Shown: positions 809-43,100 of the stretch, piece by piece
How the letters are laid out: every line of letters begins with the position of its first letter
How positions within the stretch are numbered: position 1 is the first letter of the stretch
Position numbers and translations under genes: made by a program
Origin: Ylistrum balloti
Lineage: Eukaryota
Direction of reading: 5' to 3'
Length of the DNA stretch: 64,000 nt
Assembly: GCF_031769215.1 (NCBI RefSeq)
Contig: NW_026781870.1
Location: 930,001 to 994,000 of the forward strand
The notes under the pieces: model-generated
Told to the model about the DNA's origin: nothing
The model's database searches: none
Seen by the model: the letters and a program-made list of their open reading frames with translations, nothing else

Positions 809-3800
809 GAATTCCATGTGGCCTATGTGTTCATCAAGATGGCTAACTCTCCACGTCCAGGAGTCTGGGCTCTGGAACGCTCTGTGGACAATGGAGAGAC
901 CTGGAAGCCTTGGCAATACTTTGCAGACACAGCCAGCGATTGTAACAAGTTCTTTGCTGTGGAAGCTGACACTAAATTGGTCGCTGACGATTCTGTCATC
1001 TGTGCTACTCAGTTTTCTAAAATTGTACCTCTTGTTAATGGAGAGGTAAGTATTTTCTAAAGTTTGTAATACTTTCTTAGGACTAGTTGAGCAGGTATGA
1101 TTGACCAAAAAAATACTGCATTATTTTAGATATTAGTATATGTGTCTACTAAAGCATTTTACTTTTCACTTTCACTTTGAAACAAATGCTCATTTATCCA
1201 TGGGGGTAGATCATGTTGGAAAATTTAAACAACTTCTCAATAACCAAAATGCCCTGGGTGTTGATATTAGCCCTGTAGCATGCTGGGATGAAGGGCTGCC
1301 AAGATGTTTGTCCTTTTTATTGACCTTGACCTACTTTCATACATTCAAGGTCATTGAAGTCAAATATGTTTAAATCTTTAAACTACTTCTCAATAATAAA
1401 AATGTTCAAGCTGTTGATATTGGTTTTTTAACATAAGTGGATAAAGGGATATCAATTTATTCAGCTAATTGACCTTGACTTATCATGAAGGTTTCTTTGG
1501 TCAAATGGTTGAGATTACAAAAGTTTTTCAACAGGTTCAGAGTAATGGCATTTTTGTAGTAGCATGTATAAAGAATATGATTTCAAGATTGCAGAAAATT
1601 TTTCTATGAACCAACAAGGTCAAATTGGTCAATTAATTTTAGGCCTATTTGGCCTGTTATATGTACAGGTCTTTACAGTCAGATGACCGTTGCTGCCTGT
1701 AGGCTCTTGTATTCTAATTTTGATATCACTTGGATCGAAATATTTTCTAGAGGTATTGACAGAACGGATGAGAGAGAAAAATCTAGCTATTGGTAACATG
1801 TGTGATTTCCCTGGCTTATGTACGGAAAGTTACTGTTTAAAAGGAATACTGTGTTATTTAAAGACTTTTAGAACTAGAATTATAGATGTAAATTATAAAC
1901 CTGGATAGTGAAAACACTTGTCTTTGTTGAAATTATCCTTCTAGAATTCAGATTTGGACAGGTAAAAATCTTTAGATAAAATCCATGACATTTAATACTT
2001 TACAAGAAGGTAAAATTACCTTCTGTCAGAATAAAGAGACAAATTCTGTGGTTTTCTAAGGTCATCTTTCTACCTCAGATAACATTGTAACTTAAGAAAA
2101 CATTGAACCCTGAGGCTCACATGTCATGTGGCCTCAAATGACCACCGTCAATAGCAATAGATGGGACAACAGTCTTTTCATTTCATTGAAAAACCACTGA
2201 CTCGGCAGAACAGTTTTTATAGGTTATTATTCATACTAAGTTGTCCTTTAAACTAGGTCATATGGTAAGAGTAGAAACCTGCTATGTTTGGGATAAAGCC
2301 CTCATGTAAATTTATACAAAATAGGTCAGTTGTCAATTATAAAAATGATGAAATTGAAGATAGCTTAATATTGTTGTATTTACTATATATAGCCCTGTAT
2401 GTACGAAATAAATATGCAGGATTTTCTAAAGTTAGATTTTTTTTCTTTTCATTTTTATTGGCCGAATTGCACATAGGATCTTTGTAGGATATTTCTTATA
2501 TATGTTTAAGATGTGCACCTCCTATTATGGATTCATTGCGGACATTTTCTCGGATTTTCGGGGCTTTGGAACTTAGTTATTTTCTGCAGTTTGGCAGGGA
2601 AAAGGGTTACCAGTTTTGTAGAATCAACTCCTCCTAGAGTTTTTGACATAGAAGCATGAAACATTGTAGAATATTTTTATATATGTTGAAGATGTGCACC
2701 TATTAATTAAGAATTCATTCCGGACGTTTTTTCTTGATTTTCCGGGCTTTGGAACTAAGACATTTTCAACAGTCTGGCATGGAAAATTCAAGATGGCAGC
2801 TTTTGCCTCTCATTGGTCGAGATGTTGTTTTGAGCGTGATAACCTCTCATTGGCTGAAACGTTGTTTTGAACATGATATATAACATTGCACTCATCCTGC
2901 AACCCGGCCAATTGTGGCTTTGCCCCATTTTTTTCACTTATGATTTGATGAAGGAAGATGTTTCTGTTGATTGTAAACATCAAATATATTTAACAATTTA
3001 CATATAATGAGGTGTTATTAATTTCAAGGAGTTACTGTAGTTTATAAACTGGTAAATAATCTAGAAGACAAAACTCAGAAATAAGAAGAAATGGAAAGAA
3101 AAAAAAAATCCAAGAAAAAAACTCCAATAAAGGCCGAACTTAACCCAAAATTGTAACTTTAATTTTTAACTGAAAACCGTGATTATTTTGATATAGCAAA
3201 TTACAACAAAAGAAAGGGGTGCAAATCGTAGCTAGAAAAATAAGGCACTTGGGTAGAAATGTTATCTTTTTAATTTTGATCTACTAGTTTATTTTCTTCA
3301 TGCAACTTTCATTCTAAGAAAATAATTACTGTCTTCTTTTTCACCAGATTGTCGTGTCTCTTGTGAACAACCGTCCAAATGCCATGAATTTCTCTTATGC
3401 GGAGACACTTCAGGAATGGACCAAGGCAACCAATGTAAGGCTACGTCTGATCCGAACAAAAACACTGCTAGGACATCTGATGGCTGTCGCACGTCAGGAC
3501 CCAACTACAACTCGTAGAGTAAGTATACGACTCATATCCTTGGTGAATTTGTTTAAAAATTACTGTAAATGTAAAAGTTTTTTTTTTTTTTTTTTGCAAA
3601 TATTGTATATATGTAAGGATATTCTGTTAATGTTTGTCTTAGTTTAATTGTTTGTGTCAATAACCATGAAATGCTTTGACTTTGAAAGGCATCGAATATG
3701 AAAACATAATTATATACTGTTTGTTTTTCTGAATTATAAACTTTGGCTATATCATAAAAATGAAACCCTGCCATATAGGACCATTAATCAATTGTGAAAG

Positions 3801-7100: not shown

Positions 7101-10100
7101 GACATTGAGAAACCTTAAGTCAGATAAGAAATGTTTTGAGGATAAAATGTTTGACAAAATAAATTTAAATGGATGTTACACAGCATTAGATGGGAAAATG
7201 GTCAAACCTGTTTACAAAGGCCTCTTAAGAGAGAAGATAATAATAATCTTTATAGACAGGTGACCCTTATGTACAGGTTCAATCTCAATAACATTATGAT
7301 CAGAGATTAAATTGAGACCAGAAACTTGTGGCATTTATAGACAGGTATGTGATATATAGAGGTGACATTTATAGACATGTATTTACTATGTATATGTGAC
7401 CTTTATAGACAGGTATTTGTTACATACAGGTGGCCATTAAGGCATGTTAACCTGTAGCATCAAAAAGCTACAGAAAGCTGACCTTTAACTACAGCCTGTG
7501 TCATTCTCAATTAAATATGGGTACTGTAATGTTTAGTATAGATTTAGTGTTGATTTGAAATATAAAAACTTACATTTTTAATTGTGATGTTTTGTATAAC
7601 AGAATGTCAGTGTGCAGACCCTGGTTCCTATAGTAAAGTGTGTCGAGAGGATGGCCAGTGTGCCTGTAGTACCAACTTTGCTGGATATCAGTGTAATCGA
7701 TGTGCAACCGGCTTTTACCGCTATCCAGAGTGTAGACGTGAGTATTCTAGGTGATATCAATAGTGAGTCTGAAATATCAACTGAAATCTTGATATTGAAG
7801 CTTTTAGAGCTATGCTTGCACTGAACAGTATGAGAGAGAATGAAGACTAGAGAATCAAAGATGTAAAGATATAGGTATTTTGTATATGTTGTAGAGAGAT
7901 TTGTGTTAACATACAAATTTTATAGTTGTTTCTCCTTCCAAGTTAGTGAACGTTTTGTGAGATTCATGTTTGTCATTATGTGGTATCTACTTCAGCTTGT
8001 GAATGCGACTTGTACGGAGCCATTGGACAGTCCTGCGACCAGCTGTCTGGGCAATGTGAATGTGCTCCTACATTTGAGGGGCTCATGTGTAGCAAGTGTA
8101 AAGATGGATTTTACAACTACCCAAACTGTGAAGGTAGGCCTAGAAATAATCAACATACTTAATTATACTGATTATAATCCTGAGTGGATTTCTTTCAATG
8201 ATTCTTGGGATTTTTTTATGATAGAAGATTTCAAGAAGAATATTGTTTGTGCCTGTAACCTTAGTTACCAGTCGTGAGAACTGTATTACTTTCCATGCTG
8301 AATGCTAGGCTAATTTTGTCCACTAAAAAGTTGTCATTCAGTAGTGAAAAATGTTTTAAATTTCCACATAGTGTACTTCCCCTATGTATGCTTTTTTGAT
8401 GAATTTCCCCCATTACTTAGGGGATGGTCAGTGTGACTTCAAATGAGCTGTAAGGCTTTTGTGTTTTTTAGAGTGTAACTGTAACCCTGCTGGAGCTAAG
8501 GAGATTCCAGGCTTCCCCTTGGGGGGCTGTGGTGTGGTGACACGTGGCTTGTTGTGTGAGTGTAAGGAGAAAGTGATGGGACGAATCTGTGACCAGTGTA
8601 AACCAGGCTACTACAATCTCAACAGGAACAACCCACAAGGATGTCAAGGTGAGTGTTGGTGTCAGAGGTCAGTCAACAGACTGTTAAATGGGGTCAAGGT
8701 CAGTGTACAAACTGTTAGAAGGGGCCAAGGTCAGTGCACAGACAATTAAAGGGTCAAGGTTAATTTACAGACGCTTAAAAGGGATCACTTGTTCTGGATA
8801 AGGTCCTGATTTTTAGGATGCTTCTAATTTCAATAACTTTAGGGCCAACTGTAGCATTTCAGGAAATCTTTCATGGCCTTTCAGGGTTTTGGTCTATCGA
8901 TTTTTACTTGCTAAAGATAGTTGATAGTAAAATGTCAGGAAAACAGTTTATGATGATATTTAATTACTAGCAGGTCAAGGTCTTTGTACTGAGCTTTAGG
9001 TAACAGTGTCAGCTTACTGAAGACTCCAATTTAATTAAATTCTTATCTCCTTGGAGGCAGTGATTGTAGAGAGGATCCAGGATAGTAAAATAATCTACAG
9101 GGAGTTCAAAGTGTACAAACCTACCGGGTCAAGGTCAGTACACTGACCTATCCTACAAACCAACAGGGGGAGTCAAGGTCAGTGTACTGACCTACAGGGG
9201 GAGTCAAGGTCAGTGTACTGACCTATCCTACAAACCTACAGGGGGAGTCAAAGTCGGTGTACTGACCTACAAACCTACAGGGTCAAGGTCAGTGTTCTGA
9301 CCTACAGACTACAAGAGGGGTGGGTCAAGGTCAGTCAACTGATCAATAGTTTATCTCAAAAGTATTGTATGTGTTTATTATTGTTGAATTATTGAATAGA
9401 ACATTGTTTAAACCAAGGTCATTGTACTGATTTATAGGGGTCAAGGATAATTGATCAACCTATATTACGTCATAGGTCATATGGATGAAAGTCTTTGATT
9501 AAATTATATATTCATAGAATTTGTAGTAGAATTTTAAAGAATTGAATGGTAAATTGAATTGTTTTCTATGTTAAATAATGTTTTTAAGGTGTGATGCGGC
9601 AGAATAAACAAGGATGTAACCATATGAATGGCATGATAATCTATGTAACATCCAAACAGGCTGTTCAAAGATTTCTGTAGCATGGACAATTTTGCTCTCA
9701 GTAATTCGAGTCAATAATAGTAAAAGAATAGATGTGATTTTTGTTACCTTTGTTTTCATATACTTCTGTTGATTAAATATTGTGAGTTTTAATGATTGTA
9801 GTCTTAGATAGGCATGTTTATACATCTGCCACTGTTTACTCAATTTTTGCTACGAGTCTTTGCTAAGTGATAAGTTGTTTGTTTATAAGTTGTTGTTTTT
9901 TTTGGAAAGAAAAAATAATCAAAGCATATAAGATTGGAGGTACATAGTACTTTCATGGTTTTTATTCCAGTTGAGCTTTTACATTTTTACATTTTAAAGA
10001 ACGACTTTAAAAACCTTTGTTAAAAAGACTTCCTTCTTGACTTTATTTGTCTTTGAACAACCTGGTTAACAATTAACTTGTCTAACTGTAGAGGTGTTTG

Positions 10101-13100
10101 TAACATTTTCAGCTATACCATTCCGAGGTTGTAAGTAACACATGCACAGTCAAATTATGTGTCACAATGGAATAATGCAGTTATGAGCCTAATTTGATAT
10201 TTGATAATGGTCTGACAAACTTTAGGTTAAGGAGAGGGGAGAGGGAGGTGTAGAAAATATATTTCTAAAGTGAAAGTAAGTGAGAAGAAGTACACATGTA
10301 CTTCTAGCCTAAAAGTGGTATAGTATTGTTCACGTCATGCTTAAAAATTGGAACGTATGTGAGAAATACTGGTGACACACATGATTTGACTGTATGTGCT
10401 AAGGTTCCACGATACGTGGAGACGTGATTCGCTTTTGGAATTATATTGATATATCTTACCACACTGTACTGGCGTATTAACTGTGTGTCCTCTTACAAAT
10501 TCACATGTTATTACAATAGCAGTAGGAGTCCTGTTATTTTTCACAACCAAAATTTTTTTATCTTCTTTATGAACTAATCATTTTCAACCACCCTTGTCAA
10601 TAAAACAAAATTTCAATCTCCTTTGTCAACCAATTATTGTCATGATTTATCTTCTGGAACTGATTATCATAATAATCATTTGATGTTAGATCATTGATCT
10701 CGGTGGAAAGAATTACATTTTACTGGTGAGAATTGGCTAACAATAATCTATGGTGAGAGGAGACAAATCATCGACTATCATCGGACCAGAATCCTTGTTC
10801 GTATGGACCTTTGATTATCATTTGAAATGTAACTATTTTAAGAACCATTGATTAGCCTTAATAACCAATAAGGAGAAAATTATGTGGCAGTTATGTTTAA
10901 ATAATGTTACTCGTTTTTTTATCATTATCTAATTATAAGTTTTTTTTAAAGATACTATTCACTTGTGTGTTTTGTATTGTCCTTCATTGTCAACCATTTT
11001 GTTTGTAGGCTTTTAAATAAAGACACTATGCCTATTGCACTTGATATAGATATCAATACGTGTTGCTTTCAGAAATACTGCCTCCCTTGCCTACCCAACA
11101 TTCCTTGATGTTCACGTAGAAACCTGCTGTCCCATTCATGTGGGTCAGTCCTATTTACATTTGTAGGTTCTATACATCATCATTGTTTTCGCTTTGTGTA
11201 GAGGGAATTGGTAATTACATATACACCGTTAGTAGATTTGTATTTTGAATGTTCTGCAGTATATTATATTAAATGTTCATTGTGTATTATGCTTTTCATA
11301 CCTGGACTACCACAGAGCATTGGTTTAACCCAAGTATTCAAACAGCTTCAATTTTCATATCTTGAGAGATAAATATGCTGGCAAATAGATATTGGATACC
11401 AAATTAACAGCTTATGTGAGGTTAGCAACTGTAACAATTAGCTTATCCCTGGTTACTGAAGAATTTATAATTGGCATACATCTCAACCCCAGGAACAAAA
11501 TTATTATCAAAATCATAGTGTACAATGGTCGTTTATTCTTCTGAATTTTAAGACAATTATCAGACTAATAATTAGTTGGGTTATGTTACCAGTATTCTCA
11601 TCTCTTACAACAGTGTTGATAAGTCAAAATACATCAATGAAATTGAGAATGTAACAAAAAATTAACAATGCAACAATGTAACAAAACATTAAATTGCATG
11701 CTTCATTTTCTGCATGTTTTTTCTATCTTTTTCCAGTGTTCATATGTTAATGAATATTTATGTGATTGGAATATTTTCATGTTCTTCTATTGAACATTTT
11801 TAATATCAATTCCCATGAATATTTATGAGTTAATGTCTCTTCCACAGCCTGTGAGTGCTATGCCCCAGGGACAATGTCCGGTCTAAGTAACTGTGACCCT
11901 GTTGATGGTCAGTGTATGTGTAAGACTAATGCTGGTGGCCGTCGCTGTGACACGTGTCAGCCGGGTTTCTACGGACTCAGCAATGAAAATCCATTTGGAT
12001 GTGTTGGTAAGTGTTTAAATGCAATAAATGTGCAGTAGAATAAACAAATACACAAGAAATCAATTACACTTTCATTTATACAGAAGTAGTTTATGGTAAA
12101 TTGAATTAGAAAATTTGTTTCAGTTAGTGTACTAATCTGACTGTCATCTGTCCTAATTTCCTTAATATTTATTGAATTAAAGAATATAAGAGTGCTTTTT
12201 TCATGATTAATTTTATAGGATTTAAAGGAGACTCCAAAAATTTTCCTCAACATCTGAAATGCTTTTCAGTGGAAAATTTAATTTTTAGGAACTAACCTTT
12301 TGCATGAAATTTCTGACTTTAATTTTAGTTTTGATTCTTGTTTAAAGTGGGACTGTCCAATCAAGTTAGTTTTTTAATTTGGATAATGCAACAGTTTGAC
12401 TGAGATTTTAAGATCTTGGTTATAACACCATGTATGAGCACTTCCTGATGTTGAACTTTTCATGTTGCCATAGTTTAACTGTAGCATTAGGGGATCCAAC
12501 TTTAAAGAATGGAAGCTTTCTAATGTTAGTAGTTTTTAATGTGATATTTTTATTCTGTCCCTCAGAGTGTAACTGTGACATGGGTGGATCAGTGACTCCA
12601 GTCTGTGACAGTATGACCGGCCAGTGCAGATGTAAACCAAGAGTTCGCGGTAAACGTTGTGAAAGGTCAGTAAATCCATGGGTCTTGGTACACGTTGTGA
12701 AAGGTCAGTAAATCCATGGGTCTGGGTAAACGTTGTGAAAGGTCCAACTTGAAAACGTTGTGAAAGCTTTCTAATGTTAGTAGTTTTTTATGTAAATCCA
12801 TGGGTCTGGGTAAACAATGAGAAAAGGTCAGTAAATCCATGGGTGTGGGTAAACGTTGTGAAAGGTCAGTAAATCCATGGGTGTGGGTAAACGTTGTGAA
12901 AGGTCAGTAAATCCATGGGTGTGGGTAAACGTTGTGAAAGGTCAGTAAATCCATGGGTCTGGGTAAACGTTGTGAAAGGTCAGTTAATCCATGGGTGTGG
13001 GTAAACAATGCAAAAGGTCAGTAAATCCATGGGTCTGGGTAAACGTTGTGAAAGGTCAGTAAACCAAAGGTTTTGGGCAAGCAATGCAAAAGGTATGCAA

Positions 13101-16100
13101 ACCAAGGGTCTAGAGCAAAGGATGCAAAAGGTCTGTAAACCAAGGGTTAGGGCCAAATGAGGGTCCAGGGCAAACGCAGGGTAATGTCAGTAAACCAAGG
13201 GTCCAGGCAAATGTTTTGAAAACTCAGTAAAGCTTAGATGTGGATGTTTAGTAAGATGATGTTCTATGAGTTACAGACTTATTTTATTTCTTATGAATGT
13301 TTGTCAACATCTTGTATCGACTACTTAATTCTATACTTTACCAAATGTCTATACTGACTTGAATTTCGTATGTGATACATTGTATGTTGACAGCCCAGAC
13401 ACCCTTCATTTCTATCCATCCCTCCAACAGCTGATCTATGAAATTGAGGATGGACACACGCCAGAGGGTTCCAGCATCAGATACGGTTTTGATCAGGAAA
13501 TATTTAGTAACTTTTCCTGGAGAGGATACGCCATCCTTACTCATCTGCAGGTCTGTCACAAATGCTGTCACACTGTTTACATAATATAGAATTTGTCTGT
13601 CACAAATGTTGTCACACTGTCTACATAATATAGAATTTGTCTGTCACAAATGTTGTCACACTGTCTACATAATATAGAATTTGTCTGTCACAAATGTTGT
13701 CACACTGTCTACATAATATAGAATTTGTCTGTCACAAACACTGTCACACTGTCTACATAATATAGAATTTGTCTGTCACAAATGTTGTCACACTGTACAT
13801 AATATAGAATTTGTCTGTCACAAATGTTGTCACACTGTCTACATAATATAGAATTTGTCTGTCACAAATGTTGTCACACTGTCTACATAATATAGGTTTT
13901 GTCTGTCACAAACACTGTCAGGCTTTGTCTACATAATATAGAATTTGTCTATCACAAATGTTGTCACACTGAACATAATATAGAATTTGTCTGTCACAAA
14001 TGTTGTCACACTGTCTACATAATATAGAATTTGTCTGTCACAAATGTTGTCACACTGTCTACATAATATAGAATTTGTCTGTCACAAATGTTGTCACACT
14101 GTCTACATAATATAGGTTTTATTTATTTTCCTGCTATTGAGATGTGTGATCTCATTAAACATATCTTTGATGATTGTTGAATGAGAATATTTGGATTATA
14201 CACAAGAATTCTCACTTTATTTTTGTGTGTACTTTATTTTGAGAATTTTTATTGTCAATTTTGTTTAAGAATGCTTTGATTTTTTATTTCTAGAACACTA
14301 GAGCAGTATTAATTCACTTTCACAGAAGTTTTGAATTTATAAATGAGTCCTTTTGCTAATAAGTATGAAATCTCCTACAAATTCATTTAAAGTATGCAAA
14401 ATTAGGGGATGGTCCCATGAAACAAATCCATAAGTAGTAGGTAAAAATCTACCATTTTTTACCACTCTACATGAAAAGCAAAACAAGACTACATTACATG
14501 GTACATCTAGTTTCATCAAAGTTCAGGGAGGGGTTGGAGGGAAACATGAATTTTAGTGTATATGCATTTTGCTTAAAAAGTACCATTCTAAGAAACCAGG
14601 CGAGACCTGTAACTAAGTGTAAATCTTGTATTTATATATAGCCTGAAGTCTTGATGGATGTCAATGTGATGCGACCGAGTCTGTACCGTATCATCTACCG
14701 CTTTGAAAATCTGAACGCCTATACTGTTAAGGGGGAGGTAACTCTCACTCCACAGTCAGTGGCTGACGTTAAACAGACCAGTGAGGTATTGTTTGTCCAC
14801 TCAGAGATGCCACAGTTTGTGACGGTTGGCTCTACAACTGGAGTGAAGGACTTTGTGCTGAACCCTGGCTACTGGACAATCTCTATTAAATCCCCGGACC
14901 TTTTGCTCCTGGTAAGGTCTAACAACATAACTACCTATTGACATTTACTTATATAAATCATATTATGGTGATTGTTTACAGATGTTACTCTGCTCCAGGA
15001 ACATTCTTGACTAGATCTATTTTGTAGGTTACCTTTGAATGTCACTTTGATGTTACCATACATGTCTGGTAATAAGCCCAGGGGGCTAACATTCCAATTC
15101 TGATTCATTGTTAGGAGATGAGCTTGTTACAGGACAATGAAATAGCAAATGTTTGTTATTTTACTCAACATCAATAGGTAAAAATTGGTGTATTACCAGG
15201 TTTAGGTTTGTGGGATAAAGACATTGGAATAACACAAGGAGGGTGGTGTCTCTCCTATCTATTTATAGATCAGTCCATTGTGATAACATAAGGAGGGTGG
15301 TGTCTCTCCTATCTATTTATAGATCAGTCCATTGTGATAACACAAGGAGGGTGGTGTCTCTCCTATCTATTTATAGATCAGTCCATTGTGATAACACAAG
15401 GAGGGTGGTGTCTCTCCTATCTATTTATAGATCAGTCCATTGTGATAACATAAGGAGGGTGGTGTCTCTATCTATTTATAGATCAGTCCATTGTGATAAC
15501 ACAAGGAGGGTGGTGTCTCTCCTATCTATTTATAGATCAGTCCATTGTGATAACACAAGGAGGGTGGTGTCTCTCCTATCTATTTATAGATCAGTCCATT
15601 GTGATAACACAAGGAGGGTGGTGTCTCTCCTATCTATTTATAGATCAGTCCATTGTGATAACATAAGGAGGGTGGTGTCTCTCCTATCTATTTATAGGTC
15701 AGTCCATTGTGATAACATAAGGAGGGTGGTGTCTCACCTATCTATTTATAGATCAGTCCATTGTGATAACATAAGGAGGGTGGTGTCTCTCCTATCTATT
15801 TATAGATCAGTCCATTGTGATAACATAAGGAGGGTGGTGTCTCACCTATCTATTTATAGATCAGTCCATTGTGATAACATAAGGAGGGTGGTGTCTCTCC
15901 TATTTATTTATAGATCAGTCCATTGTGATAACATAAGGAGGGTGGTGTCTCTCCTATCTATTTATAGATCAGTCCATTGTGATAACATAAGGAAGGTGGT
16001 GTCTCGCCTATCTATTCATAGATCAGTCCATTGTGATAACATAAGGAAGGTGGTGTCTCACCTATCTATTTATAGATCAGTCCATTGTGATAACATAAGG

Positions 16101-19100
16101 AGGGTGGTGTCTCTCCTATCTATTTATAGATCAGTCCATTTGTATCAGGAAAATGTTGTTTTTAGTTTCATAATTATATTACTGAATATCAAAGTCATTA
16201 GACTTACTAATGTAAGTCTAAAGGATTTCTATACCAATGTATGACATGTTTTAAATTTTTTTGTATTTCTTTAATGTGACTTTCCTTAAAGCTTAATTGT
16301 CATCACAGTATTAAAATCCAGTAGCAAAGTTTGTGATTGAAATGTCTGACCATGTTAAAATGTTGATAGCACATTGTTTTTAGTTGACTGTAATGAGATA
16401 GTTCCTTGCTTTACTAGGATTACATGGTGCTAGTACCACAAGCTTACTATGAGGCTACAGTATTGCAGCAGACAGTCACACGTCCCTGTACCATACCAGA
16501 TGATGAAGGCCCGTAAGTATTGTCCTTGGGAACAATTAAAAACTTTTTAAGGCTGTAACAGGATATTTGTTAATGATATTTGTATGACTGATCTTACTAA
16601 GGTACTTTAAAATGACAGGTGTTTTTGAAATTTTGGCAGTTTTACCGAACACTTGTGGCCGGATGTGAGGTATCTTTTTTGTTTTGATAAAAAATAACTT
16701 GAAAATATCTTTTACAAAATAAACTTGATTGTGTTAATGCTGGACATTTTTCTTTTTGGTTATGAAATTTTTTAGTTGTACGTATTTGCATATTTCATTT
16801 AGTTGTTTACAGTGAGCAGTTGGGTACCAACATAGTGAATTGTAAGTTGATGAGAGACTGGAGTCCTTCTCATAGATATATCCTTCTGTGCTATACATTG
16901 GAGGAACATTTTACTTATATGATTTTGATTTTGGCAAATGTTTTAGGTGTCTGTATTATAACTACCCTGACCTGTCACGTTTCCCTGCGGTGTCTGGTGA
17001 GAGTGGGTACACTATTGATACAGATGGCAATGTGGTTCCCACACAAGTATTCAGTGACAGAGACATCCTAGATGAACTTGATCTCGACGGAATGGCCAAG
17101 TTAGACAAAAACCAGGTCAGTCATCAATATAACTTTCAAATGAATTTGAAAAATTGTGTGTACCTTTCTGTAGCTTTGTGGCTACCATTGCCACATAGAC
17201 AATATATATAATACTATGTTCATGACTGTACAATTGATGGTAGGTTTGTCTCCAAGAAATCGTAGAAAATTTCTCTTCTTAAAAATCATAGGTAATCACA
17301 CATGTTGATTTCAATAATGATTTAGTCTCATTAAACTGAGTGATGATTACTTAATATTTACATATCCCTGCAAAAGGGAGGTTTGTTTTTTTAAGGAGGG
17401 TTAGAACAAATTATAGTGATTCTAATAATAAAAAGCAAGAATAGAGTTTCCAGATGAACTGTAATTAGTATGACAGTTTTTATTGTTTCATACTTTACAG
17501 AATTCACTAAATCTGAACCTGGCAGTTCCTGATGCTGGTCAGTACATCATAGTGGTCAACTACTTTGCCCTATCCAACACAACACAGGAAATAAATGTCA
17601 CCATGAGGACTCCAGAAGGGGACTACCTTGGAACTGTGTCTCTTAGCAACTGTAAATACAGGTAACCATAGTGATGAATATCTGGTCTCAAATGATAGTG
17701 GTCAAGTGTTCGGGTCTTTTGGTTAAAATGCTTTTTGAGCTCTTTACAGGTTCATAAATGTGACTTAGAAATAATCTTTTAAGTCCTTGTGAATCCTGGA
17801 ATAATGGATTAATCCTACAAAGGTTGTTAATATTGTAGTAAAAATACCTCTGTTACAGTGTACTATGTCGTGAAGTACTGAAGGACCTAAACAGTATGCC
17901 AGCTCTCACCTTCATCAACGGAACTGCCCAGATCATCCTCACTGGTGACGATGACGTGGATGTAGCAATTGTAAGAATCCATTTTCTCAAGTTCAAACAT
18001 TCAAAAATATTGGTTATGATCATCATTTCATGCATGTGTAATATATAATAAGATTTTACATTCTGCTATATTTATGTAAGAAACTGTATTAGATTGAAAA
18101 GGTTTTAACTTTTCAATGTAGGGCTCTGTAGTGGCAATCCCATATCCTGATTGGACTCTCGGATACATTCGTCCTAGCATCATCTGCATCCGTATCAACG
18201 GCATGTAAGTAGCCACATCAACTCATGTCCTCCATTACGTCAGGTAATCGTTTTTTAAGGAGACAAAAATGCTTCAATGAATTATGCAATAGTTTAAACA
18301 ACATGTTTTTTTTTTTTCTCAGCTTCTTGTTACTTTAATGTCTGGAAGATAATGATTGAATTGTCTGACGTGATTCTTTATAAGGAGATAACGTTTTTGA
18401 TTATTGTTACTAGATCTAAACACATGGTATATCAGAAAGTTCCGAGATTTGTGGACCTTGACATCTTATGCTTATTTTGGTCATTTTGTTGATGTCAACA
18501 TTTTTTTCATTAAATTTTCATGATATTTTTACAATGCAAAAAACTCTTCGCTATAGATTATCAAATAGTTGATACTGAACTATAAAGCTGTATGTGTTGG
18601 CTTTCAGATGTATTGGTTCCCAGTGGTCAGTTCCAGCAGACTCTCGTAGGGTTGAGTTTGAGGACCCACCCAATCAAGACCTGCGTGTTGGACCCAACGA
18701 GTTCCCATCCTGGATTGTGGGCGATAATATTGGATTAGTGCATCTAAATGATACAGTAGTAAGTTAGATCGACAAATATTGATAAAATTTTGATATCCAT
18801 GCAAATATCAAACTTACTTAAAAGTTTCAACTGTATGTAAATTTCAGGAATATCTTAAAAAAAAAAAAAACAAAATTTCATGCTTAAAAAAAATTGTGAT
18901 GATTTTTACATTTTACATATTGACTTACAGTCAACTATTGAGGTGGAGACCACAGTTCAGAATCCTGACCGCTATGTGTTTGTCGTCCACTTCTACCTAC
19001 CAAGTGAAGCAGGAATTGACCTCCCAGTTACCATTCATGCTGATGGTCAAGTATATAGTGGTCAGTATTCAAATTTTACTAAAAAAAATGAATTGCTGCA

Positions 19101-37100: not shown

Positions 37101-40100
37101 TTAGACTTCTGTATTGAACTAAAAGAAAACATTAACTGATGGATTATATATTTTCATGTCATAAGCACACGTGTGAAATATCAGAAGTCCCAACTTGCCA
37201 AACCACCAGCTCCCCAACCAACACCCCAATTTTTGTTTTTGCTTAGTGGGCCCTACCATATCAGATAAGAGTGAATTCTGTCTTTTGTTTTTGACAGTGT
37301 GTACACAGACACGCGTGACACTGCTGCCCTAGCACTTCGAGCAGCCAACGCCTACGAGGGTATTGTCATGGCAATCAATGATGCTCAAAACGCCTCACAA
37401 GCGGCAACAGGGGCAGCGTCCAGTGCACTGGGAAAGGTAACACATGAACTAGTGACTATGATATTTGACTTCATTGTATGTAATTTTATATGCAAATTAA
37501 TTGCAAGTTGCTGATGTTAGATACTGCTAAATGCTGAGCTATGTCCACTAATTGTCAGGCTATGCCTTGCTTGTGTGTTTTATTGTTGTTGTTACATGTA
37601 AAGCTGTCCTACCAGTGGTATGGTGTATCAGTCAGATTTTAAACAGCAAGCTTTTGATGGTACAGCATTATATTGATACGAATTGAGAGGAAATTAGGTC
37701 TTTGTTGCTTTGTATATGTATATATATGTATGTTATATATAACACCAGTTGAAGAAATAAAAAAATGCCCTTTCATATTTCAAGCGCAATACATTTTATG
37801 GGCACTCTTTATGTGTTGTATGTGAACTGGTGTATTGTTTAAAAAGAATTGTAGTGGTTGTAATGATAGAAACTTTGATAGGAGTGCATGTATCTTCTGG
37901 TTTCCATTTTCCTTCTCATTTCATTACCATCAAAAAATGTCCTTTTTTACAGACACTTGTCTTTCCTATATCCTAGTATAATGACAAATATAAATGAAAT
38001 TTTACTCTTCTGAAATTTAGAATTTACTTATTTCTGTCTTTTTAAATTGAATTTTGTTTTTGGTTGAGAGAGTGGCATCATCCAGTCTTTGCGAGTTAAT
38101 TATTGATGAGAGCACGGCATCGTTACACTAATTTTGGGGTTTTTATTTCAGGTGTTCCTAATGCCCGTAAGGACTCGTATTTATACACAATATATATATG
38201 TACTATAGTTACTTACATAACAACACGAAGGCTTCAGCTCTCTTTGGTAACCTTGGTAACGCCTAATGTAACAGGGCTGTGCAATGACAATGCGTGCTTC
38301 ACCAAAGTCTGTGACATTATATTTGTGGATTCTTAAAATGATTTTGAATTTGAAGAGCTGTTTCCTCCATTACACATATAACTGTAAAACCTGTCTAAAC
38401 TGAACACATACCAATATTTTTGTCCAAATATGCACAGAATGTGCAGGTTTTTATCTCATAATTGCATATTTATTATAAATCTGGTTTATGCAGGTTTACA
38501 AATTGATTTGATATATGTAAGTACACTAAAAGTGTTTGTTTGTTCCATTTCTTTTATAAGGAAAGTTTCTTCTTAAAAGGCTCTTAGACTTGAACAAGAG
38601 AAATTTGAAAACCGTTACATAGATCACAGCTATACTACACATTGACTGGGTATAGGGAAGAGAAAGCGATAAAAGGCTAAATATTGTGGTGATAGAAAGT
38701 GAAGTAAACAGAAAAGAGGATGTGTTTATCAGGCACGTATGCTTATTAGGTTGAGTACTGTACAAGTTAAAACATCAAACCCAAATTCATGATCTTTGAT
38801 TCCACAGGGTTCAGTTTAGACAGGTTAAACACTTTGATCATAGTTCTAGAATAGAATTGAGATTTGGAGTGAAGAGAAAAAACCCTTGAATAGATTAGAA
38901 ACTCATAATAACATGGACGTCCCTTAAAAAGGATACCCTTAATTCCTATGTGCCTTTCTTTCCTTGATTCTTTGTGACCCCTTACTGGTAGATTAGTGGA
39001 ATAGATCTTTCACCATTTGGAGGTATACTTCTCACAGATGTTTGTCAAAGTCATTTTAAAATTATAACTTACTGAATTGTGGAATTGATTCCAAATACAT
39101 TGGAGAATAATTCCCCTTTTTTTTTTGTCTTTTCGACATGACCGTGGGTTGAAAACACTGGTAGAAGTTTAACATTGGTGTTTCATTGATTGTGATATCT
39201 GTAAAGTGTTCACATGATTTCTGTTTGTACCAACTGGTTGCCGTAGTAACATAATATACCCTCTATTTAAGGTTCCTGGTACATATGTATGGATAACTCG
39301 TACGCTCTTCACTAACACATTGCAGCTGTAGTGTATTCTTTTCTTGGACTTGTTGCAATTTTAGGAAACAATTTTAATGAATTTCTGTGTTGCATGACAA
39401 GATTATTGATTCCTTTTGAATTAAAATTAATTTGGATGCAAATTATGAGAGGATCCATTAGATGCAGTGTATCCTGATTTGTAGGTAAATATGTAGATCA
39501 ATAAGAAGAGAATACAGCTACATTGAAATATATTCTTTAGTTGTGATAGTGCCATTCATAAACCTCATAATATGTATTGTTGAACTATATGTAAGATTTA
39601 CAACCCTTCTGGATCTTGTGTTTTACTGGGTATTAGATACATAGAATATCAGTGATCTGACTATTTCTGATATCCAATATAATTAAGTAAAAAAAATTGT
39701 ATAACATGAAATTTTTGTAGAATATTAATTGTTTTCATGGCTTTAGACAAACCACGAAAATAAAAAGCAATATATAAGACTGAATATTCAGTATCTATGA
39801 TATTGTAGACATTCATGTGACATTATGGAAATTTGCACCCCTTTAAAAATGTGCCTACAAACTTTATATGGTGGAAGTATAGTATATATATATTGTTATA
39901 GTCATTTGTAATTTTTGTTATTCCCCCTTAACAAAGCTGATGTGTAAAACACAAGCTTATATCGTGAGAGGGGGAAAAAGGCAAGGGGTTGGGGATGGGG
40001 GGTGGGGGAGTTACATACTTGATGATTGGCATAGTTCTTTTGCAGCAGTATTAAACACAAAAACTAAAACAATCTAAAGTTAATTGATCTGTATCATAAC

Positions 40101-43100
40101 TTTTACATCTGTGAATTGAATGGAGTTCATATCCAAAAAATACTGTGTTGATGAAGCTGTTTCACTACACAACCACCCTAGCAAGGAATAAAGGTAGCTT
40201 TTATCATGGGTCATCAATGAAGCTGTTTCACTACACAACCACCCTAGCAAGGAATAAAGGTAGCTTTTATCATGGGTCATCAATGGTTAAACCTACGTAA
40301 AAATGAGGAAGAAATCAGTAGACATGGGCTTATCAGTGGGTAAGCTTTTAATATGGTTGGGCTTAACAATCAGTAAGCACAAATTTATTAATGGTAGTCG
40401 GCAACACTAAACCCGGGAGATGATGGCATGAGATTATACTACAGAACAGCTCATTCATATTATCTTACATTAGCAGTAATATATAAGACAAAGTCTTGTA
40501 TATTTTGTGTTCATTTATTTGATATGTTTGAATTTTTATCCTAGAAATATTGAGAATTTACCAATTTCAGTATAAAATATGTTAAATAATGACCGAGAAG
40601 GTAGTATCCAGTGAAAAGCTGCAGTGTCAGTATTGGAGGAAGTTGGTGAATATAAAAATATTTTATTAATTTTCCACCTTATTCTGTGAATCTTTTCTAG
40701 AGCAATGAGTCTGTATGATGCATTTAACAACAACCTGACTTTTGCAGTCATTTGGGGTTGAGGAAGTGGCTGCCTCCAAAAGAGCTAGAAGTGCAGAGTT
40801 GCTTGCTGCTGCTGAAAAGAAGCTTGAAGAGACTGACATGGGTAGGTCAATTTTAGATGCTGAGCTTCTATAGCCATCAACAGATTTCATAAGCTGAAAC
40901 CTTGTTATTACTTCACACAAAAAAAAACACAACTACACACATCTAACTTTGAGAGAGGGATTAAGTGTGTTTTGAAATTTTTTCTTGTAATTGTTGCTGT
41001 AATTTTGCAAATTTTATTTGTGAGAATTATAAACCACTATGCACATATTACAACACCTTGTCTGTTTGAAAGAAAATGGTTTGCCTCCCTTCGTCCATCC
41101 AATCAAAGTTTCATATTCAAATGTGTGATAAAATCTTTATTCTATGACTTGACTAAAAGGGTCATGTGTATAACGACATTTTCACATCATTTTCTATATA
41201 TTATATGGAATATAAAATATGAAAAGTAATCCACTTTATATAAGTAATTATATACAATACTTTATTCATCACATAATTATTATACCTCTTCTTCAAGTTC
41301 TAGAAGCTGCAACTGGCAGCTTTAGCTGCTAAAAACACTGTTAATGGTTCATTATCCCAGGATGCACACGTTGGTTTAATCACATTTTGAAAATGGTGAT
41401 TTAAAAATCTTGTCAAAAAGCTCCAGAACTACTTCTTGTGAAAAATGTTTTGTGAATATTGTCCTAGTTTAACTATGATGGTTGAAACAGATGATTCACT
41501 CATGGCAGTCACATATCAGATAGACTCGGGGAAAGTTTGCAATACTGTTAATAGGCTGAAATTTAGGAAAACACAAAGAAGTAAATTGCTGCTAATCTGT
41601 GTATGATAATAGAGTCAGGGGACGGTTTGGTGTCAGGATGGAGGGCCATGAGTAGTTTATTTGAAGTTGTTTAAAAGGTGTGTTAGATTTCTAATTACAC
41701 AAGAAGGAATCCTTGTAAGGCAAGAGTTTACTGGACTTTCTTATAGAACAAGAGGATAGTTATATGGGTGTGAAATCTGTAGATACTCAGTAGAAGATTT
41801 GTTTTGTGTTTAGACTTACAGGAAAGGCTCGAGGATGCAACCTTCAACACAGACAAGGTGGAAGACACAAACCAGGAGTCAAAAGACCAACTTGACAATG
41901 TCAACTTTCAACTGCCATCACTGGAAACCGGTAGGTAGACAGAATGTTTCTTCACGTCACACTTTATCATTCGGGTACATGTTGTATATGGCAAGTTTGC
42001 AAGGTATGACAAAATGAAAGATACACAAGAAATGGAGACTCATTTGAAAACTTCAAAATTTAAATCATTTTCAATTTTCTTTACCTTTACCTGTAATCCC
42101 AGTCTGAGTCACTTTTGGGAAAAAAATCAAATTTTTCAACGACAGAAGTATTTACTGTGAATAGTTTGCAAAATAAGGAACTTGTAAATATAAAGAAATG
42201 CAGTTGATTGTGATCATAACATGAACGACACTTGCGTTTGAACTAGGAAATGGGTCATATAATTTATGACTTGATACCTTGATAGGAAACGTTGGGCAGA
42301 GGGCTCAAGATGCCATAATGCAAGCAGAAGAAGCAAGTGGTATGACGAAGGATGCCGGTAACAAGGTCAATGACATCATTCGAAAGTTGCCGTCAAACAA
42401 AGCCAAGGTCGAGCAACTCATCAATGATTCCACAAAGACCAAGAAAAACACCCAATACGCTGATCAGCAGAGTAAGTGTCTTATTGATATCAGAATTTAA
42501 ATTAAGAGGTCAGAGTTCAACAAAATCGGGAAAAAAGGAAGGTCTTTGTAAATCAGATTCAAATTTACAGTGAATCCTACTTTGTATTTAAACCTAAGTT
42601 TCTATACTACAGCTCAGGATGTGAAAGAGAAAGTGCCGCAGATCATGGACTTGATCAAGCTGGTTGGAACACAATCTAGGAATGTTCGTAGTCTTCGGGA
42701 CAGTGTTATGGGCAACATCACTGATCTCCGTGAGAAGATTATACTAGCCCGTGATGAGGCAAACAGGGTGAGATAACTACCTTTGCATGTCCTCCAATAT
42801 TCTGGAAGATTTAAACTCCTGACATAAGCACAATAATCTTGTAGAGACAATTCCTCTTGTAATACTAAACTGATTTTAGTATTATAATTACTGGTATCAT
42901 GACCTTACTATGCTAACCTTGTTTTTTATTCATGATTACAGATCCGAGTTGGAATGGAGTTCCTAGGAAACACAACAGTTGCCCTTAGAAATCCACCAGA
43001 TGTTGACTTGGCTGGGTCATACAGTCGCTTTACCACTTACATTCGTACCCAACAAAGTGATGCCCTGCTGGCTTACATCGGTGAAGAATTCATCCCTGAA

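What the first reader, a model, noticed from the sequence alone, without database searches (positions are those of the whole stretch)
10113..10130. 18-nt in-frame microexon candidate between LE9 and LE10
Seen: tctaact (branch-like) ... gtaacattttcag|CTATACCATTCCGAGGTT|gtaagt, a good acceptor and a perfect GTAAGT donor in a phase-1 intron. Inclusion reads ...GCQ-AIPFRG-SCEC, in frame with no stop. An upstream AG (10091) would give an also in-frame 39-nt version. A six-residue insert between LE modules could add a kink, cleavage site or binding site in the short arm (inference).
Basis: partly seen in the sequence, partly recalled or inferred. Interest (0 to 1): 0.7.

Follow-up and report, generated by a model that had tools for sequence, protein, structure and literature searches.

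The report
Conserved 18-nt laminin alpha microexon
The 18-base stretch is very probably a genuine, scallop-specific alternative microexon of the laminin alpha gene: it adds six residues between two normally rigidly joined laminin-EGF modules, a close relative already carries it as an annotated isoform, and I could get no RNA from this species to confirm it.

Summary
Window 10113-10130 is preceded by ttttcag and followed by gtaagt, inside the 3199-nt phase-1 intron between two exons that each encode one complete laminin-EGF module.

Splice signals alone prove nothing. The acceptor is weak, and 16 intronic decoys in the same gene score at least as well.

- **Isoforms in a relative.** Mizuhopecten yessoensis RefSeq isoforms X1 and X2 differ only by ELPFRGS versus A at exactly this junction. 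That is the footprint of an 18-nt phase-1 cassette.
- **Genomic orthologues.** The M. yessoensis and Pecten maximus genomes carry the element at the same place. It is 18 nt, in frame, stop-free, with identical splice sites and a conserved CTAAY branch site. The peptides are AIPFRG, AVPFRG and ELPFRG.
- **Conservation.** It is the most conserved 60 nt of the intron: 80% three-way identity against 29% overall. None of the 16 decoys is conserved.
- **Distribution.** Pinctada, Crassostrea and Mytilus have a 168-587-nt intron here and no such exon, so it appears pectinid-specific.

The window's exons match the single annotated Ylistrum balloti protein, which is the skip form. The exon is therefore unannotated in this species.

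I had no RNA data, so inclusion here is inferred. A conserved 27-bp long-range RNA stem starts 10 nt after the donor. AlphaFold2 predicts that the insert loosens the LE9-LE10 joint.

The parts
8472..8648 (+). Constitutive exon encoding laminin-EGF module LE9 of the laminin alpha (LanA/epi-1 type) gene. It ends in phase 1 (…GGATGTCAAG|gtgagt).
   Evidence: PF00053, E 1.2e-11, profile 1-49/49. It is 100% identical to XP_060062600.1 from Ylistrum balloti.
8649..11847 (+). Phase-1 intron of 3199 nt that hosts the microexon. The orthologous introns are 4885 nt in P. maximus and 4552 nt in M. yessoensis, but only 168-587 nt in oyster, pearl oyster and mussel.
10082..10086 (+). Candidate branch site CTAAC, with the branch A at 10085, 27 nt before the acceptor G. 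It is conserved as CTAAT in the other two scallops.
   Evidence: invariant CTAA columns. The CUAAY consensus is taken from PMC8797185.
10110..10112 (+). 3' splice site cag. It is weak, at the 4th percentile of this gene's real acceptors, and is preceded by ACATTTT, which is invariant in the three genera.
10113..10130 (+). 18-nt cassette microexon. With the split codons it turns GCQ-A-CEC into GCQ-AIPFRG-SCEC.
   Evidence: Orthologues lie at L006:23536-23553 (AVPFRG) and L005:29592-29609 (ELPFRG). M. yessoensis isoforms X1 and X2 differ only here.
10131..10139 (+). 5' splice site GTAAGTAAC, identical in all three scallop genera.
   Evidence: donor at the 22nd percentile of real donors.
10141..10168 (+). 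5' arm of a conserved long-range RNA stem. It begins 10 nt downstream of the microexon donor.
   Evidence: 27 consensus pairs; z = -3.35.
10368..10398 (+). 3' arm of the long-range stem. It lies in the second conserved island of the intron (10370-10468).
11848..12006 (+). Constitutive exon encoding LE10. It starts by completing the split codon (G|CC = Ala in the skip form, T|CC = Ser in the inclusion form).
   Evidence: (PF00053, E 3.4e-13).

Best explanation
Window 10113-10130 is a genuine alternatively spliced cassette microexon of the scallop laminin alpha (LanA/epi-1 type) gene. It arose in the pectinid lineage inside an expanded LE9-LE10 intron.

At the RNA level it is defined by three conserved signals: a CTAAY branch site, a weak acceptor and a perfect GTAAGT donor. 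A conserved 27-bp stem pairs the sequence starting 10 nt after the donor with a conserved block about 230 nt downstream. I infer that this stem tunes donor use or brings distal elements close.

At the protein level, inclusion lengthens the invariant two-residue linker between the eighth cysteine of LE9 and the first cysteine of LE10 to eight residues. The insert is [A/E]-[I/V/L]-P-F-R-G. I infer that this makes a flexible, exposed loop or hinge in the otherwise rod-like LEa array of the short arm. It could be a binding or protease-accessible site.

Shown: the element, its conservation, and the isoform pair in a related species. Inferred: actual inclusion in this species, the role of the stem, and the protein consequence.
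For: (1) M. yessoensis RefSeq isoforms XP_021350179.1 (X1, 3633 aa) and XP_021350180.1 (X2, 3627 aa) differ only by ELPFRGS versus A at residue 741, the LE9/LE10 junction.

(2) Genomic orthologues exist in M. yessoensis (L005:29592-29609) and P. maximus (L006:23536-23553). Both are 18 nt, stop-free and in frame, and both are flanked by ttttcag and gtaagtaac.

(3) The best-conserved 60-nt block of the whole intron is 10103-10162, at 80% three-way identity against 29% overall. Only 3.9% of 30.5 kb of this gene's intronic sequence is conserved in both species, in six blocks.

(4) Control: 0 of 16 decoy pseudo-exons with equal or better splice scores are conserved. The candidate is conserved in both species across both splice sites (E 3.5e-17 and 2e-9).

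(5) The substitution pattern fits a constrained peptide. PFRG is invariant, position 2 is always aliphatic (I/V/L), and CGA/CGT is synonymous.

(6) The region is single copy in its own genome, so it is not a recognisable repeat.

(7) The long-range stem is predicted in all three species, with duplex energies of -32 to -41 kcal/mol and a consensus of 27 pairs. Six pairs are kept through one-sided changes.

(8) AlphaFold2 on the skip form gives pLDDT 85.7 and pTM 0.74 with a confident junction. On the inclusion form it gives pLDDT 75.2 and pTM 0.45, with insert residues below 50.
Against: There is no RNA evidence for this species. The only public run found was DNA contigs, and no transcript-derived protein fragment spans the junction.

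The annotated protein that matches the window (Y. balloti XP_060062600.1) and the P. maximus protein are both skip forms.

The RNA support behind the M. yessoensis X1 model could not be inspected here. That it rests on RNA-seq is my inference from how the NCBI pipeline builds alternative variants.

The acceptor is weak and the polypyrimidine tract is poor.

The stem shows no double compensatory changes, because its 3' arm is invariant. Sequence conservation for some other reason cannot be excluded.

The AlphaFold2 alignment has gaps at the insert in every other row, so a low pLDDT there is partly expected.
Confidence: 0.88

Rival explanations
1. It is a conserved intronic non-coding element, such as a splicing-regulatory RNA structure, a decoy exon or an enhancer, that merely looks like an exon. 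It would be rarely or never included in mature mRNA, and the M. yessoensis X1 model would reflect splicing noise.
For: Conserved non-exonic islands do exist in this gene's introns, for example 2006-2328, which has no open frame. The block around the candidate takes part in a conserved long-range stem. The acceptor is weak. Two of the three scallop annotations lack the exon.
Against: The length (18 nt), the frame, the absence of stops and both splice sites are preserved in three genera. The changes inside the element are conservative or synonymous at the peptide level. An annotated isoform pair differs by exactly this cassette. A pure RNA-structure element would not need an intact AG…GTAAGT pair and reading frame.
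Confidence: 0.08
2. It is a chance pseudo-exon: a fortuitous AG…GTAAGT pair in an AT-rich intron with no function.
For: Sixteen decoys with equal or better splice scores lie in 30 kb of the same gene's introns. The control strand has 30 such pairs.
Against: It is conserved with both splice sites in two other genera whose introns are otherwise about 29% three-way identical, while 0 of 16 decoys are conserved. It is annotated as an isoform in M. yessoensis.
Confidence: 0.02
3. It is a recursive-splicing intermediate exon, used to remove the expanded intron in two steps and then spliced out, so it never appears in mature mRNA.
For: It has a strong GTAAGT donor shortly after an acceptor, and it lies inside an intron that expanded from under 0.6 kb to 3-5 kb in scallops.
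Against: Recursive sites juxtapose AG|GTAAGT, whereas here 18 nt lie between them. The intron is short for recursive splicing. The open frame and the conservative peptide changes would not be needed. The X1 isoform retains the exon.
Confidence: 0.02

Closest known systems
M. yessoensis laminin subunit alpha-like isoform X1 (XP_021350179.1) versus X2 (XP_021350180.1)
   Same: It is the orthologous gene. Its LE9 and LE10 are 97% and 88% identical to the window's exons. It has the same 18-nt phase-1 cassette at the same junction, the same splice-site flanks and the shared PFRG core.
   Different: The peptide is ELPFRG rather than AIPFRG. It is a database model only, with no publication or experiment known to me. 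In the window's species and in P. maximus the exon is not annotated.
Agrin y (4 aa) and z (8/11/19 aa) splice inserts
   Same: These are very short alternative exons in a basement-membrane protein of the laminin-related domain world. They add an exposed loop that changes binding: heparin and dystroglycan at the y site, LRP4 at the z site (PMC6966886).
   Different: The agrin inserts sit within loops of LG domains and have proven ligands and neural specificity. The insert here sits between two LE modules in the short arm, and its function and tissue pattern are unknown.
eMIC (SRRM3/4, Srrm234)-dependent neural microexons
   Same: The exon is at most 27 nt and frame-preserving, has a weak 3' splice site and a strong CUAAY branch site, and has highly conserved flanking intron (PMC8797185).
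   Different: There is no UGC motif within about 40 nt upstream of the acceptor in any of the three species. There is no UCUC-rich polypyrimidine tract. AG dinucleotides lie just after the branch site. Neural specificity could not be tested.
Other small cassettes annotated in lophotrochozoan laminin alpha genes
   Same: Isoform pairs in Mytilus (5 aa), Littorina (6 aa), Biomphalaria (6 aa) and Lingula (9 aa) differ by single tiny inserts. A 15-nt exon at window 38152-38166 is included in the P. maximus protein.
   Different: Those inserts lie in the LG domains or the coiled coil. None lies at an LE-LE junction. At this junction, 153 of 159 homologues show the standard spacing.
Long-range intronic RNA stems that control alternative exons (for example FGFR2 IAS2-ISAR, RBFOX 'RNA bridges', the SMN2 exon 7 long-distance structure)
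   Same: Two conserved complementary intronic blocks about 200 nt apart lie next to the donor of a regulated exon. The named examples are cited from my own knowledge.
   Different: No functional test has been done. There is no double compensatory covariation, and the effect on inclusion is unknown.

Membership tests
Alternatively spliced cassette microexon | Length of at most about 27-30 nt, frame-preserving and without a stop codon | tested here: met
   It is 18 nt and reads A-I-P-F-R-G plus Ser from the split codon. The same holds in two other genera.
Alternatively spliced cassette microexon | Canonical AG acceptor, GT donor and branch site, conserved across species | tested here: met
   ttttcag, gtaagtaac and CTAAY are invariant in three genera. 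The acceptor is weak by PWM.
Alternatively spliced cassette microexon | Both inclusion and skipping transcripts exist | tested here: inconclusive
   M. yessoensis RefSeq isoforms X1 and X2 differ only by the cassette. No RNA run was available for this species, and no transcript fragments were found.
Alternatively spliced cassette microexon | The exon and its flanking intron are more conserved than the rest of the intron | tested here: met
   80% against 29% three-way identity, the top block of the intron. None of 16 decoys is conserved.
eMIC/SRRM3-4-dependent neural microexon programme | UGC motif close to the 3' splice site | tested here: not met
   No TGC occurs in the ~40 nt upstream of the acceptor in the window, L005 or L006. 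The feature is taken from PMC8797185.
eMIC/SRRM3-4-dependent neural microexon programme | Very weak 3' splice site with a strong CUAAY branch point | tested here: met
   The acceptor is at the 4th percentile. CTAAC/CTAAT is conserved.
eMIC/SRRM3-4-dependent neural microexon programme | Neuron-restricted inclusion that depends on the eMIC domain | not testable with these tools
Laminin alpha chain, LanA/epi-1 (alpha3/5-like) type | LN domain, LE arrays interrupted by L4 (Laminin_B) domains, coiled coil, and LG domains | tested here: met
   Window exons align to residues 131-3622 of XP_060062600.1, with exon cores 100% identical. Homologues carry PF00055, PF00053, PF00052, PF06009 and PF00054/PF02210. 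The flanking exons are complete PF00053 modules.
Recursive splice site / RS-exon | Acceptor and reconstituted donor juxtaposed (AG|GTAAGT) in a very long intron | tested here: not met
   18 nt separate the AG and the GT, and the intron is only 3.2 kb.

The most novel reading that the evidence does not exclude
The microexon is a scallop-specific molecular switch that turns the rigid LEa rod of laminin alpha into a hinged or cleavable arm. The invariant Pro-Phe-Arg|Gly in an exposed eight-residue linker would be a site for a trypsin- or kallikrein-like protease, or for a binding partner. Tissue-specific inclusion would then allow release or reorientation of the polymerising LN-LEa1-9 arm. Inclusion would itself be set by the conserved 27-bp long-range RNA stem next to the donor.
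Probability: 0.1. Interest if true: 0.6.

Novelty: new member of a known kind. Interest (0 to 1): 0.35.

Why it matters
LE modules are normally joined by an invariant two-residue linker that makes laminin short arms stiff rods. At this junction, 153 of 159 homologues from across the animals keep that spacing. An alternatively spliced six-residue insert exactly at such a joint would be a simple, regulated way to add a hinge or an accessible site to a basement-membrane scaffold.

The case has three practical uses:
- It corrects two genome annotations. The exon is missing from the Y. balloti and P. maximus models.
- It shows that signal-only microexon calls need comparative support. Sixteen equally good decoys sit in the same gene.
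- It gives a compact system, a microexon plus a conserved long-range stem, for studying microexon regulation outside vertebrates and insects.

Tried and rejected
- **RNA evidence.** The look-up of sequencing runs returned one run only. Read laying showed it to be DNA contigs of another individual, about 97-98% identical and continuous through the intron. Junction reads therefore could not be tested. Substitutions in its contig over 9850-10245 were not itemised, so the 18-mer's polymorphism state is unknown.
- **Transcript-derived fragments.** A word search with the LE9-LE10 piece of the matching protein found only single-exon genomic ORF calls and no spliced fragments.
- **Joined model.** Exons were searched by reference, and database proteins were used for the junction.
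- **Unnamed relative.** Contigs L002-L004 (LE9 91% identical at the protein level) extend only about 1.2 kb past LE9 and show no intron similarity or microexon motif. This is inconclusive, because the exon lies 1.5-3.3 kb into the intron in the scallops.
- **P0039.** Its 28-residue 'insert' at this junction is an intron read-through in a fragmentary model, not a microexon.
- **Isoform pairs in other phyla and classes** differ at other sites, not at this junction.
- **Metagenome pattern scan** for the conserved 34-mer found nothing.
- **The 39-nt version** is rejected as the main form.
- **Repeat origin** is rejected: the region is single copy in its own genome.
- **A bacterial-style promoter and terminator scan** is irrelevant to a eukaryotic intron.

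Full report
**Observation.** The sequence is exactly as described. CTAAC lies at 10082-10086 and a cag acceptor ends at 10112. The 18-mer occupies 10113-10130 and gtaagt occupies 10131-10136.

They are 8472-8648 and 11848-12006, separated by a 3199-nt phase-1 intron. Each exon is one complete Pfam EGF_laminin module.

Skipping reads GCQ-A-CEC and inclusion reads GCQ-AIPFRG-SCEC. Counting cysteines in the matching protein gives 74 up to this junction, which fits the name LE9/LE10.

**Is the signal more than chance?** On splice signals alone it is not. I built a position weight matrix from 46 uniquely resolved real junctions of this gene. Against it, the microexon donor sits at the 22nd percentile and the acceptor at the 4th.

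Sixteen other AG…GT pairs of 3-51 nt in 30 kb of the same gene's introns score at least as well on both sites. The non-coding minus strand shows 30 simple YAG…GTRAGT pairs per 64 kb. A reader scanning 64 kb would therefore meet such patterns by chance.

**What gene is it?** Searching the LE9 exon against 1.8 billion representative proteins returned invertebrate laminin alpha chains. A word search with the best full-length hit did the same. These are LanA/epi-1, alpha3/5-like proteins of about 3600 residues.

The window covers residues 131-3622 of XP_060062600.1, 'laminin subunit alpha-like' of Ylistrum balloti, with exon cores 100% identical. The window therefore very probably comes from that scallop or a very near relative. 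That protein is the only isoform found for it, and it is the skip form.

**The decisive comparison.** Among 159 homologues that span both modules, 153 have the standard spacing. The exceptions are mis-paired modules, one intron read-through (P0039), and one real case: Mizuhopecten yessoensis isoform X1. Its LE9 and LE10 are 97% and 88% identical to the window's exons, and it reads GCQ-ELPFRG-SCEC.

Its cluster also holds isoform X2. X1 and X2 are identical except for ELPFRGS versus A at residue 741. That is exactly what an 18-nt phase-1 cassette produces.

**Genomic orthologues.** I fetched the orthologous genomic loci. Both M. yessoensis (L005:29592-29609) and Pecten maximus (L006:23536-23553) carry an 18-nt element in the same intron. 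In both it is flanked by ttttcag and gtaagtaac and preceded by CTAAT.

The encoded peptides are AIPFRG (window), AVPFRG (Pecten) and ELPFRG (Mizuhopecten). P-F-R-G is invariant, position 2 is always aliphatic, and the Arg codon change is synonymous.

**Conservation.** In a three-way alignment of the introns (3199, 4885 and 4552 nt), only 29% of window bases are identical in all three. The best 60-nt block of the whole intron is 10103-10162, at 80%.

Across 30.5 kb of this gene's introns, only 3.9% lies in blocks detectable in both other genomes. There are six such blocks.

None of the 16 decoys is conserved. The candidate is conserved across both splice sites in both species. The region is single copy in its own genome.

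**Phylogenetic range.** In Pinctada, Crassostrea virginica and Mytilus the LE9-LE10 intron is only 242, 168 and 587 nt and has no such exon. Isoform pairs annotated in other molluscs, a brachiopod and a starfish differ at other places. The exon therefore looks like a pectinid innovation in an expanded intron.

**The 39-nt variant.** Its acceptor scores below every real acceptor and lies 5-6 nt after the conserved branch A. P. maximus has a 4-nt deletion in the extra 21 nt, which would shift the frame. I reject it as the main form.

**How it may be regulated.** The sequence from 10 nt after the donor (10141-10168) is complementary to 10368-10398, which lies in the second conserved island of the intron. 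The stem appears in the minimum-free-energy folds. Its duplex energies are -32 to -41 kcal/mol in the three species.

It is also the main helix of the RNAalifold consensus, with 27 pairs. Six pairs are kept through one-sided changes, three are broken in one species, and none shows a double compensation because the 3' arm is invariant. The window segment folds with z = -3.35.

This resembles known long-range structures that modulate alternative exons (my own knowledge), but its effect here is inferred.

Compared with eMIC-dependent microexons (PMC8797185), the weak acceptor and the strong CUAAY branch site fit. The UGC motif and the UCUC-rich tract are absent. I therefore do not file the exon in that programme.

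**Protein consequence.** All LE-LE joints in this protein have two residues between the last cysteine of one module and the first cysteine of the next. The insert makes this one eight.

AlphaFold2 with a 42-sequence alignment gives the skip form pLDDT 85.7 and pTM 0.74, with a confident junction. It gives the natural M. yessoensis inclusion form pLDDT 75.2 and pTM 0.45, with insert residues below 50.

That is consistent with a flexible linker. The alignment is gapped at the insert in every other row, so this is weak evidence. Pro-Phe-Arg followed by Gly resembles substrates of trypsin- and kallikrein-like proteases (my own knowledge). That idea is speculation.

**What is missing.** There is no RNA from this species. 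The single run found was DNA, and no spliced fragments were found. That the RefSeq X1 model rests on RNA-seq is my inference from how that pipeline makes alternative variants.

**Verdict.** This is a real, conserved, lineage-specific alternative microexon with about 0.88 confidence. It is annotated in one relative and missing from this species' annotation. It is a new member of a known kind and of moderate interest.

Noticed in passing
window 38152-38166: The other first-stage candidate, a 15-nt microexon in the coiled coil (attcag|GTGTTCCTAATGCCC|gtaagg, reading VFLMP), is also conserved in L005 and L006 with 2 mismatches. The annotated P. maximus protein contains the matching insert (ALGK-VFLTP-SFGV), while the Y. 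balloti and M. yessoensis proteins lack it. It lies inside a 344-nt conserved intronic island (38057-38400).
   Followed up: partly
window 2006-2328: A 323-nt intronic block in intron 1046-3347 is conserved in both other scallop genomes and has no open reading frame. It is a conserved non-coding element of unknown role, and one of only six such blocks in 30.5 kb of introns.
   Followed up: partly
window 37488-37664 and 38846-38981: Two more conserved intronic islands flank the 15-nt microexon in the same intron (37437-40747). They may be splicing-regulatory elements.
   Followed up: no
window 10399-10468: Downstream of the 3' arm of the stem, conservation continues (TATGTG…GGTTCCAC…GTGGA). It includes a small hairpin-like inverted repeat that is predicted in the window and in P. 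maximus.
   Followed up: partly
window 8657-8760 and 9128-9313: Tandem repeats with 31-, 44- and 75-nt units (GTCAAGGTCAGTG… type) lie in the same intron. The other individual's contig skips 74 nt at 9133-9208, which is a copy-number polymorphism of the 75-nt unit.
   Followed up: partly
window 13585-14112 and 15219-16241: Long intronic tandem arrays give spurious repetitive open frames, for example a 341-aa frame of repeated [17 protein letters not shown] units. They are minisatellites inside laminin alpha introns.
   Followed up: no
L009:64387-66683 (Mytilus trossulus laminin alpha locus): A hAT-type transposase gene (Dimer_Tnp_hAT, FAM200/ZBED5-like) sits inside an intron of the mussel orthologue.
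   Followed up: no
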